A stretch of 64,000 nt of DNA from Podarcis erhardii (Eukaryota): NCBI GenBank assembly GCA_964252035.1, contig OZ176201.1; one strand, 5' to 3'. A program made the translations under genes and the position numbers. This document shows, piece by piece, positions 13,852 through 27,703 of this stretch; position 1 is the stretch's first letter, and each line of letters opens with the position of its first letter. The notes under the pieces are model-generated. The model made no database searches, had not been told where the DNA came from, and saw only the letters and a list, made by a program, of their open reading frames with translations.

Positions 13852-15529
13852 TATTAGGAACAGCGGGGCTCTGCTGGAGCTGTGGGGTGTTGAAGGGTTT
13901 TTTTCTTCTTTACATAGAGGAATTTTGAGAGAGAGTTGTTAACAGTTCCTTTTGTCATTCCCTCCCCCCTTCCTTCAGCCCCTGGTAGTCTCTCAGCCCC
14001 AGCAATGCACATTTTGTCCCTGGTATACAATCCTAGCTTTATGCTTTGGTTTATCGCCATTTGCCAGAAAGCTGTAAAAATTTCCCCTTATTCCATTGGG
14101 GAAAGTTTTTGTATATCCCCCGAGTGCTGAGAATCCAAATACAAATGTATTCCTCTCGAAGTGCAGTCGTCAGAGAAAACCAAAGACCGTTTGTCAGGCC
14201 AACTTCAGAGGAGCTGCATGCATTCTGACAAACTGCAGAGGCTTATGTTTTATTCACCAGGCCTGAAAAATACCTTCCCGAATAAGGGGGCCCATAAATA
14301 AACCAGCATGATGAATATTACACAGAATAAGAAGTGATACAGTGGGAGCCCTTCTTCAGCACTGCACAATGGTCCTAGAGAAGGATGTGGCTTTTCTTGC
14401 ATCTAATTCTGCTTGATAAGGGAATAGGGGGAAATTTCCTAGAGAAATTCTTTTCTTCTAGGGAAATGGATGAGGCTGGGTATCACCATCTGTTGTGCTT
14501 TTGTTTGCCTATCATGTGCAAAAGATGATGTCATGTAATTTAAGATAAAAGTGACACACCCTAGTGTGGATTACTCACGTTGTGTACCTTCCATTGATTC
14601 CCCGTTTCCAGAGATGTAGAAGTAAGGGTGATGACATTGCTCACCATTTTTGCTATAAATTTGTGATTATATTTGAGGTGTCTCATGCATGCACATGGAG
14701 CTAGAAGAGAGCAGGAACTCCAAAGTGTAGGTAAGGGGACCAGTCTGGCAAATTGGGTGCTGAAAGCAGAATCCCAAAGGCTGAAATTGCCTGAATCGCT
14801 GTGCCTGCTTTGAAATAAAAATGATGCTACCTTGCGGTGGGGCAGCTGGCCATAGCAGAAGCTCCTACTTGTTTTCTTAAGTAAGAAACCATGTCACCAG
14901 AATGGTGTGAACCTTGTTTCTGACTCCATCACTCCCTTTTTTGAAGCATCCCACCTGACCCATGTCTGTACTCTGCTCCAAAGTATAGCTTGGAGTTCAT
15001 TGGTCTCTAATGCCTCTGTTAGTTAATAATTGAGGGGCTGTCTCTGCCTTGCAGTATATTTTCCAGTTGCCCTGCAGTAAATAATATGTCTAACTTTTTT
15101 AAAAAAATAATATTTATTGCTTTTAAATCTTACAAAAAAAAGAAGAAAAGAAGAAGAAAAGAAAAAAGAGGGGGGGAAAGGCAAAAGAAATAAAATACAA
15201 TACAATACAATATACAATGCACAACACAACATTAACACATTAAACTAAACATAAAAAAATTAAAAAACATACATCATACCGTTTCAATGCCCTATCTTTC
15301 ATTCCCTCGTTTCATCGACCTCCTCTCACCTCCCTTTTTGTATTCCACTTCTATTAATTATTTCAGCAATTCCTTTCCCTCTTTCTCTATTTTCTGTCAT
15401 ATAATTAACTTAACTTATTTTAACCTTATCTTCCATTAATACCATAATACTTATTTATACTTAACTCCTTATAACATTTCTACTAAAGCCATATAATTTC
15501 ATTCCAACATTTTTCTAACACTCATTAAT

Positions 15530-15648
15530 TTTACAATATTTCTATAAATAAACTTTAAACTTTTTCCAATCTTCTTCCACCGTCTCTTCTCCCTGTTCTC
15601 GGATTCTGCCAGTCCTTTCCGTCTATTCCATATGGTCCATCAACCTGG
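15530..15648 (-). pseudogene. Decayed C-terminal remnant of L1 ORF2
   Basis: Translates LMDHME*TERTGRIREQGEETVEEDWKKFKVYL*KYCK, homologous to ...MTGRIRDQRRETVEEDWKKFKIYLKNCCK at the end of the ORF in 26396-27487. Confidence 0.85.
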
Positions 15649-16356
15649 TGATCTTCTGTCCGAGGCTCTTAACTCTTTTCCAAGTCCCTTCTGCAGATCT
15701 TCTTCATATTTATATATGCACTTTACTTTGTCTTCTGTTGATCTTGTTCTTAATTTCCTTCCTTTGATGCTGAGGAGTAGATCTCGGGGAGGCTCCAACC
15801 TAGCAATATTTTTATTCTTTCTCGACAGGTGAGCCAAATCTCCATAGTTAGCACTAAAGTCCAAAAGATGTTTCAGGACGTGTTTCAAAATCCCTCCAAA
15901 ACTGAAAGTCCCCACAACTCCAATCTCCTTCTGGCCCAAGTCCAAATCCCAAAGGTCAGTACATCCCTGCATGAGGGAATCTATCCAACTTTCCTTCTCA
16001 AATCCAAGCAGGGTTCCAATCCTCAAAATTTGACTTTCTCTAAATTCAGTCATAGAAGGCAACAACTTATAGTCATCAAATTGCCTCTGTAAGACTGGGA
16101 ATCTCTCCACTTGTATTACTTTAGGTTCAACAACAACTTTTTCCCTTGCCTTCTCAACAATTTGCCATGTCAAAGTAGATTCCTGAAACAATTCCTGAAT
16201 AGTTTCTGTATAGATGTTCACTTTTTGTCCCAAATCAGTCACTTTTTGTCCCAAATTGTCAATTTTGATAGTCATTACATCCGTCTTCTTATGAAGCTGT
16301 TCCAATGAGGCACTTATCTTGCATAATGCAATCACCAAGGCTTCTTCTGTCAACAT
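15640..16356 (-). CDS. L1 ORF1p-like protein, 238 aa (coiled coil plus RRM-like region, short C-terminus)
   Basis: First ATG at 16356 (the ORF track starts at an upstream TTG). Heptad-rich N-terminus (ISASLEQLHKKTDVMTIKIDNLGQKVTDLGQKVNIY). DLAHLSRK...PPRDLLL resembles the ORF1 RRM D-AHR...PR-IIV motif. Family assignment is by motif recall. Confidence 0.7.
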   Translation of the reverse strand: MLTEEALVIALCKISASLEQLHKKTDVMTIKIDNLGQKVTDLGQKVNIYTETIQELFQESTLTWQIVEKAREKVVVEPKVIQVERFPVLQRQFDDYKLLPSMTEFRESQILRIGTLLGFEKESWIDSLMQGCTDLWDLDLGQKEIGVVGTFSFGGILKHVLKHLLDFSANYGDLAHLSRKNKNIARLEPPRDLLLSIKGRKLRTRSTEDKVKCIYKYEEDLQKGLGKELRASDRRSPG

Positions 16357-18262
16357 TCTTACCAATCCAAGGTCAATCCCTGGTTCTCACAGTTTTTTTT
16401 TATCTCTGCAGCTGGTAGTCCCCCCAGCTCCACTCCTGTAACAGTTTCAAAGGCTCCCTCTAGAGGGAAACAATTTCTATTTTTATCAGTCCTTTTAAAC
16501 ACAGTTCAAGCAATAAAATTAGTTTCAGTTTTCGGTTACTTTTACTCCTTTTTAAACGCAGAAGGAAACAATGGAAACAATATATTTCTCTTATTTAGCT
16601 ATCTGTCCACATACGTTTTATTCACAGTCAATGAACTTTCCCAAAACATCAGTCTTACTAGCAGCCCTTTTCCAGGTTCGAAGCGGTGGTAATTTATCTT
16701 TCTTCACTCTCTCTCCTGCAGGCTTACACGATCCAAAATTTCCCCCCTCTTCTCCTGCTTCCAAGGGGGGGTTTAATGATTTTAACCGATGGAGGTTTAA
16801 TCCTTTACCGAAGACTTTCCATGACTTTAGCTTGCAGCCTCTTTGCTTCAGTCTATTTACAAAAGGGGAAGGCGGACTTCCTGTTTTAAACCTCCCCGTT
16901 TCGGTGCCAAATTAAGACATTTAAAAATCCAATTTTCCGTTCTACTCACGGGTAGTTGTTTTAAGATCAAATTGTCCACAGGAAAAAGTCAGCACTCTCC
17001 GACAATAGCTATGCGGCTTCACTCCGTGAAAGAAGCAGTCAATTCGAAGCACCGTGCCACTCACCCCACGTCGCTCCGGATCCCTGAAACCGGGTTTCCC
17101 CGCGAGTAGGGGAGGCACAAAAGGTGCCAGCCGAATCCCACGTTCACAGGCTTCTCCCGCCTGTGATTTTTGGTGGGTCCCCGCCTTCGCCATGGCAGCC
17201 AGACCCTAATTTCCACGAAGCAAATTCCTCCCGATCAGAGGAATTCAGCCATTGCTGGAGGCGCCAACCCAGAAGTCTAATATGTCTAACTTTTGCCCAT
17301 TGTTTGTTCTTGAGCTCACATCTGCATTCACTGCTGTGGAATGGACACAGTTTTCTGAGCAAGCAAATGTTTGGGCAGATGTGTAACAGGGAGAACTGTA
17401 GAAGCATAGTCTGATAATGAAAAGAAATGTTCCGCCTTTTATCGTAAGCTACTAAACAAGCATTCACAGCTTGACTCGGCGGCCTGGGAAGATATAGCCT
17501 CCAATCTCATTTGCTACTGCCACTATTTCTTACAGAATGTGTAGCAGAAACCAGGCTGGCAAATTCTGGCATCTTTATGATTCAGTCTCTGCACAAAATG
17601 ATTCAGCCTACCTCCTTGCAGGTCCTTGCCTGGAATATCCAAGGCAGGAAATACTTTGGTTGAAAAGTATATGGTTTGCTATATTCGTAGCTATGGCTGC
17701 TTCAGATGCTGGACACACACGCACGAAAGGAAGCAAACAGCCTAACCCTTTGTATTCTTTGTTCAGTTGTATTAAATCACACTCTTGTTTTGACAAATCA
17801 TTAATTAGAAATCCCCCTTTCTACATTTTCGCCAAATGCAAAACAAAGTTCTTGAAAACATTCAAAATGACCTGCAAACATTCCCATTTCACCCCCTCCC
17901 AACATTACATTTTTAATAGCTTGAGATGAAATGAACTTTCCCACCACCTAAGTATTAAAGCTCAGAACTTAACAGCAGCAACAGTTGCAGGTCCAGGTCC
18001 ATTTTATTTTTTATTGCACCCTTTGCAATAAATAAATGTGGCTGGACTCATAATGGACTCTGGAAAGTGAGTTTTCATGCATGGGCTTATAAAAACTCTC
18101 TTGAATGGACTCCCTAGATTTGGAGCAGTGAGACTCTCACTTGCCTGGTTTTCAAACATGGTAAGACTGCAACAAGGCAAATGTGCTGGCTCCAGCAAGG
18201 AACTCACATCTGCTTTGCTCCCCCCCCCCCAGACTTTTTAGGTCACCATAGGACGGCAGCTA

Positions 18263-26083: not shown

Positions 26084-26395
26084 TGGGTCTGGTCTAGGGA
26101 ACCACCTGTCTTAATCTGGACGGAGCTTTGGTTTGTTGGCTCTCATCCAGTCCAGTATCAAGGCACATCCACTACGCCTGCAGATGTGAATAAGTAGAGC
26201 TGTGTGTCATCTTCATATTGCTACTGTGTTAGCTACTGGGCCAGTGGAGAGGATTTTGTGTGAGAGTTTTGCTCACCCCCACCAGTATTTCTGACAGACC
26301 TTCCTCAGCGTCTTTACACTCACCGTTGTCTTGCCCTGTGAGCTCCCATTTTGAACACAAGGCAATCCACACATTTGAGAGTTGTGAGTGAAAGA

Positions 26396-27703
26396 TGGCT
26401 ACTTCTTGAGAATACAGATATTCTGGATCTGGAAGGTTATGATAATAACTTTGGTTGGCATGCATATTTATGGTATGACAAGGTAAAGGTACATAGAAAC
26501 TTTAAAAACCATATTGTCAGGAAAGCACTGTATAATGTATGGAATCGATATAAAGATTTGTTAGAGAGTAAAACCCCCAGGTGGTTGTCACCAATGGAAG
26601 CCAAGGCGGTAAAAAGACTGAACATGGATTCAGATTGGCCAAAATATTGTGAAATTATAGAATATGATGGTGAAAAGTTAAAACTACAGAGTTTTGAGAA
26701 ATTGAAACCTAAAGTCCGAGACTGGTTACATTATTACCAGATTAATGAGACCTTTAAGCAGGACAGGAAACTAGGATTCCAGAAGGAGAGGTCAAAGTTA
26801 GAAACAGAATTGCTAGAACCCAATACTAAGAATTTGTCTAGAATGTATAATTTGCTGCTAAAATGGAACACACAGGATGAAACGGTTAAATCAGCCATGA
26901 TTAAGTGGGCACAAGATATTGGTCATGATATTATGTTTGCTGACTGGGAGCAGTTATGGACCACAGGTATTAAATTTACGGCATGTAGTGCCTTAAAAGA
27001 GAATATAATGAAAATGATCTATAGGTGGTACATGACCCCAGTCAAGCTTGCAAAGATATATCATTTGCCCAATAACAATTGTTGGAAGTGTAATGAATGC
27101 GAAGGAACTTTTTATCATCTTTGGTGGACCTGCCCGAAGATTAAGGCCTACTGGGAAATGATCTATAATGAAATTAAGAAAATCCTTAAGTGGACATTTG
27201 TAAAGAAACCGGAGGCTTTTCTCTTGGGCATGGTAGGCCAAATGGTTCCAAAGAAAGATAGAACATTTTTTATGTATGCAACAACAGCAGCAAGAATTCT
27301 TTTGGCAAAGTATTGGAAGACTAAAGAATTACCTACTCTGGAAGAATGGCAGACCAAGGTGACTGAATTTATGGGACTGGCAGAGATGACCGGCAGAATC
27401 CGTGACCAGAGGAGAGAGACAGTGGAAGAAGACTGGAAAAAATTCAAAATCTATCTTAAAAATTGTTGTAAAATTTCGGAATGTTAAGATGTCAAGGGAT
27501 TGGATATAAAGAATTACAGCTGTAAAAATTGAAACTTAAAAAACTTTAAAGAGAATTAAATATAAAAAGGGATGAAGGATTGCTAAAAAATTTTAAAACA
27601 AGGATGCAGTGAAGGGGAGGTTTGGGGAAGTCGTGTTATGTTTGTCTGTTTTTTGTTTATGTTGTAAAATTAATAAAAATTATTTTTTTTTTAAAAAAAA
27701 AAA
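26396..27703 (+). mobile_element. 5'-truncated L1 LINE (ORF2 C-terminal region, 3' UTR, tail)
   Basis: Uninterrupted frame to 27487 with the CCHC knuckle CWKCNECEGTFYHLWWTC. AATAAA at 27672, T10-A11 tail, 19-bp TSD gagagttgtgagtgaaaga at 26377-26395 and 27704-27722. Confidence 0.95.

What the first reader, a model, noticed from the sequence alone, without database searches (positions are those of the whole stretch)
15095..17277. Full-length ORF1-only L1 derivative (half-L1 architecture) in a lizard genome
Seen in sequence: a ~2.18-kb minus-strand unit between 13-17-bp TSDs. It has an L1-type 5' end (gacttctgggttggcgcc), a ~0.9-kb 5' UTR, one intact 238-aa ORF, ~35 decayed codons of the ORF2 C-terminus, a 3' UTR, AATAAA and a tail. 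No endonuclease or RT coding sequence is present. Established knowledge: ORF1-only HAL1 elements are described mainly from mammals and are mobilised in trans by L1 ORF2p. Inference: the ORF1-like frame is open while the adjacent ORF2 remnant has two in-frame stops. This suggests a non-autonomous family that retrotransposes as a unit under selection to supply its own ORF1p, arising independently in squamates. I am not aware of a described lacertid family, but cannot search.
Basis: partly seen in the sequence, partly recalled or inferred. Interest (0 to 1): 0.85.

Follow-up and report, generated by a model that had tools for sequence, protein, structure and literature searches.

The report
Lizard half-L1 retroposon, shrunken ORF1
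This is a young, complete copy of an abundant lizard jumping gene that is a cut-down LINE-1: it keeps the LINE-1 promoter end, a shrunken first gene and the tail, has lost the copying enzyme, and so presumably borrows that enzyme from full LINE-1 elements, as "half-L1" elements do in mammals.

Summary
Window 15099-17277 (minus strand) is a 2,179-bp retroposed unit between perfect 17-bp target duplications. Two related lizards have the exact empty site.

It consists of:
- a 921-nt L1 5' UTR,
- a 238-aa ORF,
- about 44 decayed codons of the ORF2 C-terminus with two stops,
- a 3' UTR, AATAAA and a very short A tail.

It belongs to a family. Thousands of contigs in three organisms match it. A second complete copy in Podarcis lilfordi has its own duplication and the same ends. 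Five diverged lineages share the ORF1-end/ORF2-tip junction.

The ORF derives from L1 ORF1. It matches lizard ORF1 proteins at E 1e-26, and their RRM-CTD profile matches solved LINE-1 ORF1p at E 3e-6. It lacks the N-terminal tail and about 42 residues of the RRM, and it has no Pfam match.

Only its coiled coil is confidently predicted, as a helix and as a trimer. The frame stays open across lineages that differ by 35-50% in nucleotides. The post-helix half shows no constraint on its amino acids, unlike full-length ORF1 tested the same way.

The scan noted this kind before on other pieces of this genome (s1-220626, s1-263167 and others). I class it as a squamate HAL1-like family, a new variant of a known kind.

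The parts
17278..17294 (-). 5' target-site duplication (17 nt, AAAAGTTAGACATATTA)
   Evidence: Read directly. The empty-site joint 15081->17278 with 17 shared letters is seen in runs X2 and X6.
16357..17277 (-). L1-type 5' UTR (921 nt), starting GACTTCTGGG
   Evidence: Element positions 3-617 are 75% identical to L007 7058-7676. That stretch lies directly upstream of ORF1 and an EN/RT ORF2 in a P. lilfordi L1. The same 5' terminus occurs in copy L002. This region has high contig depth.
15640..16356 (-). mini-ORF1: 238-aa ORF derived from L1 ORF1 (stop codon included)
   Evidence: ORF list. phmmer gives E 1e-26 to 356-aa lizard ORF1 proteins. hhalign of the mini profile against the full-length RRM-CTD profile gives prob 97.4, E 1e-11. 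There is no Pfam match.
16129..16347 (-). coiled-coil part of the mini-ORF1 (aa 4-76)
   Evidence: AF2 with a 29-row alignment gives a helix over aa 4-76 at pLDDT 88-97. The homotrimer model of aa 1-80 scores 0.75 against a best control of 0.01, with in-register heptad contacts.
15889..15894 (-). site of the ~42-residue RRM deletion (between aa 155 and 156, ...FSFGG | ILKHV...)
   Evidence: Alignments to full-length ORF1 proteins. By alignment to solved LINE-1 ORF1p, the missing stretch corresponds to RRM beta3-alpha2-beta4.
15659..15666 (-). core (GCCTCGGA) of a ~14-nt block that is invariant at nucleotide level in all mini elements, just before the stop
   Evidence: It occurs once per mini element, always at the same place. 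It is absent from the four full-length or derivative L1 loci and from the rest of the window.
15518..15649 (-). decayed remnant of the last ~44 codons of L1 ORF2 (two in-frame stops), in a different frame from the ORF. The ORF's TGA lies in this ORF2-derived sequence.
   Evidence: blastn shows 76% identity to the window's own L1 fragment at 27370-27486. tblastx and tblastn match ORF2 C-terminal aa 325-378. Junction alignment.
15099..15517 (-). 3' UTR with AATAAA (15113-15118), a T run and a 2-6 nt A tail
   Evidence: Read directly. The 3' end matches the L1 fragment at 27649-27698, L001 11695-12154 at 83% and L002.
15082..15098 (-). 3' target-site duplication (17 nt)

Best explanation
This is a recently inserted, complete copy of a high-copy, non-autonomous LINE-1 derivative of lacertid lizards. 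It has half-L1 (HAL1-like) architecture.

Shown:
- The unit is an L1 5' UTR, a shortened ORF1, the last ~44 codons of ORF2, the 3' UTR and the tail.
- It inserted as one piece with a 17-bp duplication.
- Other copies and diverged subfamilies share the same termini and the same internal junction.
- The short ORFs fall on one side of a well-supported branch, apart from the full-length L1 ORF1 proteins.

Inferred:
- The L1-type 5' UTR drives transcription.
- The shared L1 3' end lets ORF2p of autonomous L1s copy the RNA in trans by target-primed reverse transcription. The duplications start with AAA(A), as at L1 endonuclease sites.
- The encoded protein is a reduced ORF1p. A trimerising coiled coil is retained, half of the RRM is deleted, and the RRM and CTD remnants have drifted.
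- Selection on the source copies keeps the frame open and, weakly, preserves the coiled coil. It does not preserve the sequence of the C-terminal half.
- The most likely role of the protein is to assemble on its own RNA, or to co-assemble through the coiled coil with L1 ORF1p. Either would give the RNA access to L1 particles and ORF2p.
For: Anatomy:
- Anatomy and duplication.
- The empty site with 17 shared letters is seen in contigs of organisms B and C, whose flanks differ by about 2.5-3%. A filled 5' junction is seen in organism A with 1 mismatch.

Family:
- About 16,000, 17,000 and 5,000 contigs at 85-100% identity cover the whole element in three organisms, while the flanks are single copy.
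- A second complete copy, L002 3086-5249, has its own 16-nt duplication and the same ends.
- The junction is shared by the window element, L002, L003, L004 and L005.
- An ML tree separates the 5 short ORFs from 12 full-length ORF1 proteins with 100/100 support.

L1 origin:
- The 5' UTR matches a P. lilfordi L1 that has ORF1, Exo_endo_phos (4e-14) and RVT_1 (4e-39).
- The ORF2 tip and 3' UTR match L1 copies.

ORF1 origin:
- phmmer E 1e-26 and hhalign E 1e-11.
- The full-length profile hits PDB LINE-1 ORF1P chains 2ykp, 2yko and 2ldy at E 3e-6.

Coiled coil:
- The AF2 helix has pLDDT 88-97.
- The trimer model scores 0.75 against a best control of 0.01. The mark was reached by 21 of 30 solved same-chain pairs and 0 of 23 single chains. 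The partner's pLDDT is 83 and the runs agree in at least 96% of contacts. The calibration used two copies rather than three, and the pass may reflect memory of solved coiled coils.

Frame maintenance:
- In a DNA-only alignment, 7 of 7 ORF indels are multiples of three, against 6 of 31 in the UTRs (Fisher 1.4e-4).
- A neutral simulation gives P(no stop) of 0.002-0.015 per lineage.
Against: - Pfam finds no Transposase_22 in this ORF. The profile of short ORFs alone finds no solved ORF1p.
- Outside the helix, the AF2 model is below pLDDT 60 and has no strands.
- In-frame pN/pS among the short ORFs (median 0.73) equals that of shifted frames (0.70 and 0.86), and the three codon positions differ equally.
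- Full-length ORF1 pairs of like divergence give 0.31-0.41 against 0.9-1.5, with the third position most changed. The protein sequence of the C-terminal half is therefore not visibly constrained.
- The ORF (63-68% identity) is less conserved than the 5' UTR (75-77%) between the two complete copies.
- All short ORFs compared were found because they are open, which biases the frame argument.
- One lineage (L006) has an early stop.
- A non-coding L1 parasite noted elsewhere in this genome (s1-259098, not checked here) suggests no ORF is needed for mobilisation.
- Mobilisation in trans and expression are not shown. Run X15 is only guessed to be RNA.
Confidence: 0.85

Rival explanations
1. The family is real, but the ORF is a neutral relic. 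On this view the element spreads as a non-coding L1 parasite through its 5' and 3' ends alone. Open frames are seen only because copies are young and because gene callers report only open ones.
For: - There is no amino-acid-level constraint after the helix, and codon positions differ equally.
- The ORF is less conserved than the UTRs.
- AF2 confidence is low beyond residue 76.
- L006 has an early stop.
- Among close copies, the differences are 0 synonymous and 1-3 non-synonymous.
- A 1,675-bp non-coding L1 parasite was noted elsewhere in this genome (not checked).
Against: - Five lineages that differ by 33-55% in ORF nucleotides all read through to the same ...RASDxRSPG stop at the junction.
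- 7 of 7 ORF indels are multiples of three, against 6 of 31 in the UTRs. About 15 indels, and 4-6 new stops per lineage, are expected at neutral rates.
- The second codon position changes least in the helix part in most pairs.
- The heptad pattern still gives a confident trimer model.
Confidence: 0.2
2. It is a one-off product at this locus: either a full-length L1 that lost ORF2 by deletion after insertion, or a single chimeric retrocopy made by template switching.
For: Before the searches, only the window's own anatomy was known. Another, different deletion derivative exists in L001.
Against: - The empty site in two organisms removes exactly the 2,179-bp unit plus one duplication.
- The same architecture, termini and junction occur in L002 with its own duplication, and in L003-L005.
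- Thousands of matching contigs cover the ORF part.
Confidence: 0.02
3. The short ORFs arose several times from different L1 subfamilies by parallel deletions and do not form one long-lived lineage.
For: In each segment, this copy is as close to some full-length-type ORF1 sequences (P0003 62% in the helix, P0006 56% in the C-terminal part) as to the other short ORFs at 29-50%. Mammalian HAL1 arose repeatedly (PMC5753468).
Against: - All short ORFs share the same ~42-residue gap, the same junction, and the invariant GCCTCGGA block, which is absent from the L1 loci.
- The tree, built without the gap columns, puts them on one side of a 100/100 branch. Long branches and relaxed constraint could inflate that support.
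Confidence: 0.1

Closest known systems
Mammalian HAL1 (half-L1) elements (Smit 1999; Bao and Jurka 2010, as cited in PMC5753468 and PMC4161310)
   Same: Both are non-autonomous L1 derivatives that keep the L1 5' region, encode only an ORF1-derived protein and keep an L1 3' end. Both form families and are thought to rely on L1 ORF2p in trans.
   Different: This element derives from a squamate L1 lineage, so it has an independent origin. Its ORF1 is cut down: no N-terminal tail, and half of the RRM deleted. It has no Pfam match and no detectable amino-acid constraint after the coiled coil. From my own memory of Bao and Jurka (the paper is not held), mammalian HAL1 keeps a complete, conserved ORF1p.
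L1 ORF1p (coiled coil, RRM, CTD; solved as 2ykp/2yko/2ldy)
   Same: The lizard full-length ORF1 profile matches it over RRM and CTD at E 3e-6. The mini-ORF is homologous to those lizard proteins and keeps a predicted trimeric coiled coil.
   Different: About 42 residues of the RRM (beta3-alpha2-beta4) are absent. Conserved RRM and CTD residues are replaced, for example NLRIRAVPE and FRWEFPQGLSF. The fold beyond the helix is not predicted with confidence.
Other copies noted by this scan in the same genome (s1-220626, s1-263167, s1-220650, s1-254812, s1-254825)
   Same: They are described as 1.9-2.3-kb ORF1-only L1 derivatives, with ORF1 joined to the last ~45 codons of ORF2.
   Different: s1-263167 could not show that other copies share the structure. 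Here that is shown with an empty site, a second complete copy and five lineages.
SINEs and other non-coding parasites that carry a LINE 3' end
   Same: They borrow the LINE reverse transcriptase through a shared 3' end.
   Different: This element keeps the Pol II-type L1 5' UTR and an open, frame-maintained ORF.

Membership tests
HAL1-type (half-L1) non-autonomous L1 derivative | 5' region and 5' terminus shared with an autonomous L1 | tested here: met
   Element positions 3-617 are 75% identical to L007 7058-7676, directly upstream of ORF1 (P0026) and an ORF2 with Exo_endo_phos and RVT_1.
HAL1-type (half-L1) non-autonomous L1 derivative | Only an ORF1-derived ORF; no endonuclease or reverse transcriptase | tested here: met
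   The 238-aa ORF is the only ORF of 130 aa or more in the element. ORF2 similarity is limited to the last ~44-54 codons.
HAL1-type (half-L1) non-autonomous L1 derivative | L1 3' end (3' UTR, polyadenylation signal, A tail) and target-site duplication | tested here: met
   The A tail is very short, as in the L1 fragment at 27649-27698 and in L002.
HAL1-type (half-L1) non-autonomous L1 derivative | A family: several copies with the same internal junction and different insertion sites | tested here: met
   Empty site in two organisms and thousands of contigs. L002 has its own duplication. The junction is shared in five lineages.
HAL1-type (half-L1) non-autonomous L1 derivative | Mobilised in trans by L1 ORF2p | not testable with these tools
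   Only indirect evidence: the shared L1 3' end, 16-17-nt duplications starting AAA(A), and no RT of its own.
HAL1-type (half-L1) non-autonomous L1 derivative | ORF1 kept by selection | tested here: inconclusive
   The frame is maintained: 7 of 7 against 6 of 31 indels are multiples of three, and the simulation supports this. There is no amino-acid-level signal after the helix, unlike the full-length ORF1 controls.
L1 ORF1p (Pfam Transposase_22 and relatives; coiled coil + RRM + CTD) | Match to the Pfam family models | tested here: not met
   There is no hit even at E 10. The full-length lizard ORF1 proteins also fail, so this test is insensitive for this lineage.
L1 ORF1p (Pfam Transposase_22 and relatives; coiled coil + RRM + CTD) | Homology to the ORF1 of autonomous L1s and, through them, to solved LINE-1 ORF1p | tested here: met
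   phmmer 1e-26, hhalign 1e-11, and the full-length profile against 2ykp/2yko/2ldy at E 3e-6. The profile of short ORFs alone has no PDB hit.
L1 ORF1p (Pfam Transposase_22 and relatives; coiled coil + RRM + CTD) | Trimerising coiled coil | tested here: met
   This is a prediction only. The helix over aa 4-76 has pLDDT 88-97. The trimer scores 0.75 against a best control of 0.01, with the caveats given by the tool.
L1 ORF1p (Pfam Transposase_22 and relatives; coiled coil + RRM + CTD) | Complete RRM | tested here: not met
   A ~42-residue gap covers beta3-alpha2-beta4 in all short ORFs.
L1 ORF1p (Pfam Transposase_22 and relatives; coiled coil + RRM + CTD) | Folded CTD | tested here: inconclusive
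   The region aligns with the CTD, but its conserved residues are replaced and pLDDT is below 50.
L1 clade of LINEs (source element) | APE endonuclease + RT ORF2 with a Cys-rich C-terminus, ORF1 of the coiled coil-RRM-CTD type, and an A tail | tested here: met
   I made no RT phylogeny, so placement within the clade is not tested.

The most novel reading that the evidence does not exclude
The shrunken ORF1 protein may be kept as a bare trimerisation module. It would co-assemble with the ORF1p of active L1s and so smuggle the parasite's RNA into L1 particles, or poison those particles. It would evolve fast in a conflict with L1 or with host factors. That would explain an open frame, a retained coiled coil and a freely drifting remainder. 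Under this reading the family is a protein-level parasite of L1, not just a borrower of its enzyme.
Probability: 0.2. Interest if true: 0.75.

Novelty: new variant of a known kind. Interest (0 to 1): 0.5.

Why it matters
Half-L1 elements are described from mammals. A squamate counterpart that is abundant, recently active and independently derived would show that the ORF1-only way of parasitising L1 recurs outside mammals.

The lizard form is also a natural deletion experiment. The coiled coil and an open frame persist, while half of the RRM is gone and the rest drifts. This bears on which part of ORF1p a non-autonomous RNA needs to be copied by L1 ORF2p. The many young copies and the insertion differences between close species make that question testable. 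For genome annotation, these copies should not be called as host genes, as has happened in Podarcis assemblies.

Tried and rejected
Searches with the single ORF gave nothing:
- Pfam
- PDB by sequence
- the word-indexed protein search
- the ESM Atlas
- AF2 without an alignment: pLDDT 40, useless

Other searches:
- The last word-indexed search, with short ORFs only, added one protein, P0036.
- The profile of short ORFs against PDB found no ORF1p.
- I did not run fold search. Only one long helix of the model is confident, and matches to a lone helix are meaningless.

Selection tests that were uninformative:
- Four near-identical copies differ by 1-3 changes, all non-synonymous.
- At the ten best-supported sites where this copy departs from the family majority, 4 changes are synonymous and 6 are not.
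- Classical dN/dS between subfamilies (0.4-0.7) looked like constraint. I rejected it as evidence after the shifted-frame control gave the same values.

Rejected explanations: a post-insertion deletion and a single template-switch chimera.

Also tried:
- tblastx suggested that ORF2 similarity extends about 12 codons into the ORF. I judged this a spurious extension, because full-length ORF1 (P0006) carries the same ...ELRALDRRSP... end.
- Bao and Jurka 2010 is not held.
- Run X15 is only guessed to be RNA, so I make no claim of expression.
- The source organisms of the Logan contigs could not be named.

There are no N in the window. Solved human LINE-1 ORF1p chains appear only as rows of a tool result and were not taken further.
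Full report
**Observation**

On the minus strand the window holds a 2,179-bp unit, 15099-17277. It lies between two perfect 17-nt copies of AAAAGTTAGACATATTA, at 17278-17294 and 15082-15098. Its parts are:
- a start reading GACTTCTGGGTTGGCGCC,
- 921 nt before the first ATG of a 238-aa ORF (16356-15640),
- a stretch like the end of L1 ORF2,
- a 3' UTR,
- AATAAA at 15113-15118,
- a T run and only a few A.

There are no N in the window.

**The insertion is real and young**

Logan contigs of four public runs were laid on 14500-17900.
- In organisms B and C, one contig each (1,229 and 2,843 nt) joins 15081 directly to 17278, with 17 letters that fit either side. This is the empty target site.
- The flanks of those contigs differ from the window by about 2.5-3%.
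- In organism A, a contig with one mismatch runs from the right flank 29 nt into the element. The site is therefore filled there.
- The unit went in as one piece after these lineages separated, or it is still polymorphic.

**It is a family**

In the same laying, about 16,000 contigs (A), 17,000 (B) and 5,000 (C) at 85-100% identity cover every part of the element. In A, about 2,400 of them are at least 99% alike. The flanks have the depth of single-copy DNA.

Summed depth over the ORF part is about a thousand times the flank depth. The tool warns that this figure is not a copy number, so I read it only as "high copy".

The 3' part is deepest, as expected if it is shared with 5'-truncated L1 copies. 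One such fragment lies in the window at 26351-27698. It has an open 378-aa ORF2 C-terminus, 76% identity to the element's ORF2 remnant, and the same kind of 3' end.

**Relatives elsewhere**

An exhaustive phmmer search found 16 proteins. They are of two kinds:
- proteins of 340-370 aa from Podarcis and from unnamed Logan contigs;
- short ones of 174-215 aa that end, like ours, in ...RASDxRSPG.

The contig of one short protein (P0007, Podarcis lilfordi) holds a second complete element at L002 3086-5249. It is 70-77% identical in the UTRs. It has the same first bases, the same last bases (GCAATAAATAGTATTTTTTAAAAAA) and its own 16-nt duplication, AAATCTATGGCGTGTG.

An alignment across the stop codon shows that the window element, L002, L003, L004 and L005 share one junction. 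The ORF1 end is followed at once by the ORF2 tip, and the stop codon lies in ORF2-derived sequence read out of frame.

A block around GCCTCGGA is invariant at nucleotide level in all of these elements. It is absent from the L1 loci.

**Origin from L1**

The contig of P0026 (P. lilfordi) carries a near full-length element:
- a 5' UTR 75% identical to element positions 3-617,
- ORF1 of 370 aa,
- ORF2 with Exo_endo_phos (4e-14) and RVT_1 (3.9e-39),
- an ORF2 end 87% identical to our remnant.

Pfam recognises none of the lizard ORF1 proteins, long or short. A profile of the RRM-CTD part of 14 full-length proteins does match the solved LINE-1 ORF1P chains 2ykp, 2yko and 2ldy at E 3e-6, over both domains.

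The profile of short ORFs matches that full-length profile with probability 97.4% and E 1e-11. The alignment has a gap of about 42 residues between ...AFRLG and IFKDIPK.... By alignment to the solved protein, the gap covers beta3, alpha2 and beta4 of the RRM.

The short ORFs also lack the basic N-terminal tail and the C-terminal tail.

A maximum-likelihood tree was built only from columns present in our ORF. It puts the five short ORFs on one side of a branch with 100/100 support, against twelve full-length proteins. Our copy sits on a short branch and the others on long ones. Long branches and relaxed constraint could inflate this support. Together with the shared gap, junction and block, though, a single origin is the simplest reading.

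**What the protein is**

With a 29-row alignment, AF2 predicts a helix over residues 4-76 at pLDDT 88-97. Nothing confident follows, and there are no strands.

A model of three copies of residues 1-80 scored 0.75 in all three runs, against a best control of 0.01. Contacts are in register at heptad spacing. The tool's caveats are:
- the mark was reached by 21 of 30 solved same-chain pairs and 0 of 23 single chains;
- the partner's pLDDT is 83 and the runs agree in at least 96% of contacts;
- the calibration used two copies, not three;
- a pass may reflect memory of solved coiled coils.

The full-length profile also matches trimeric adhesin coiled coils. I conclude that the coiled coil is retained and the nucleic-acid-binding half is crippled.

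**Selection**

Classical pairwise dN/dS between subfamilies is 0.4-0.7. A control with the same alignments read in shifted frames gives the same values: medians of 0.73 in frame against 0.70 and 0.86. The three codon positions differ equally.

The method does have power at this divergence. Three full-length ORF1 genes at 33-43% nucleotide difference give 0.31-0.41 in frame against 0.9-1.5 shifted, with the third position most changed.

Split by region, the post-helix half of the short ORFs shows no constraint at all. In the helix, the second codon position changes least in most pairs, which is a weak sign that helix character is kept.

The frame itself is maintained. In a DNA-only alignment of the two complete copies:
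- all 7 indels in the ORF are multiples of three, against 6 of 31 in the UTRs (Fisher 1.4e-4);
- about 15 indels would be expected in the ORF at the UTR rate;
- a neutral simulation gives 4-6 new stops per lineage, with P(no stop) of 0.002-0.015.

These ORFs were found because they are open, so the argument rests on a further step. Source copies of five lineages that differ by a third to a half of their nucleotides could not all have stayed open by chance. One lineage (L006) does carry an early stop.

The ORF is less conserved than the 5' UTR, at 63-68% against 75-77%. Either the UTRs carry constrained signals or the protein evolves fast.

**Mechanism**

Shown: the architecture, the unit insertion, the family, the L1 and ORF1 ancestry, and the maintained frame.

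Inferred:
- transcription from the L1-type 5' UTR;
- copying in trans by L1 ORF2p through the shared 3' end, with duplications that begin AAA(A) as at L1 endonuclease sites;
- a protein that acts mainly through its coiled coil, either on its own RNA or by joining L1 ORF1p trimers.

The main rival holds that the ORF is a relic and the element spreads as a non-coding parasite. I give it about 0.2. A one-off deletion or chimera is excluded.

**Comparison and novelty**

The closest known kind is mammalian HAL1, a non-autonomous L1 derivative that encodes only ORF1p and arose several times in mammals (PMC5753468; also PMC4161310 and PMC8535693). The key paper, Bao and Jurka 2010, is not held.

No held paper links HAL1 with a lizard element. 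Repbase and Dfam could not be consulted.

The lizard family has the same architecture. It differs in its independent squamate origin and in its reduced, fast-drifting ORF1.

The scan has noted the same kind on other pieces of this genome: s1-220626, s1-263167, s1-220650, s1-254812 and s1-254825. I could not compare those sequences.

**Verdict**

This is a real, young member of a high-copy squamate half-L1 family and a new variant of a known kind. It is of moderate interest. Its main open question is what a coiled-coil-only ORF1 remnant does.

Noticed in passing
window 26351-27698 (+): A 5'-truncated L1 copy. It has an open 378-aa ORF2 C-terminus (Cys-rich CWKC...HLWWTC motif), AATAAA, and a run of T followed by a run of A. 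It served as the in-window comparator for the element's ORF2 remnant and tail.
   Followed up: partly
P0004 and P0028 (Podarcis muralis proteins; no locus fetched): These proteins are annotated TRIM39-like. They have RING and B-box domains and a coiled coil, followed by a full lizard L1 ORF1p RRM-CTD part. This is either a gene-model artefact or a TRIM-ORF1p fusion, which would be of interest as a possible restriction factor.
   Followed up: no
L001 7182-12154 (Podarcis raffonei, CM049768.1): A different L1 deletion derivative. The ORF1 N-terminal half is fused to a post-RT piece of ORF2, which is then joined to the last ~46 codons of ORF2 and the 3' UTR. It is annotated as a host protein, P0003. 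This shows that internal deletions recur in this L1 lineage.
   Followed up: partly
window 15655-15670 (-) and the same place in L002-L006, L008-L010: A ~14-nt block (TTAAGRGCCTCGGAC) is invariant, third codon positions included, in lineages that otherwise differ by 35-50%. It may be a signal at the RNA level and not a protein constraint.
   Followed up: partly
window 15099-15118 (-), window 27670-27698 (+), L002 5225-5249: This L1 lineage ends in AATAAA, a short spacer, a run of 6-10 T and then only a few A. The T run could pair with the A tail. I did not examine this.
   Followed up: no
alignment A2 (full-length lizard ORF1 proteins), profile positions about 51-146: The coiled coil of the lizard ORF1 proteins matches trimeric autotransporter adhesin fragments (2wpq at E 7e-7) through repeated N-T-x-x-I type motifs. 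This is consistent with a trimeric coiled coil.
   Followed up: no
run X15 (organism I), contigs on 15366-17277: A small run guessed to be RNA holds contigs of the family. One is an 835-nt contig that spans the 3' UTR, the junction and part of the ORF. Another is a 1,553-nt contig that ends at the element's 5' terminus with unrelated sequence beyond. This does not show transcription.
   Followed up: no
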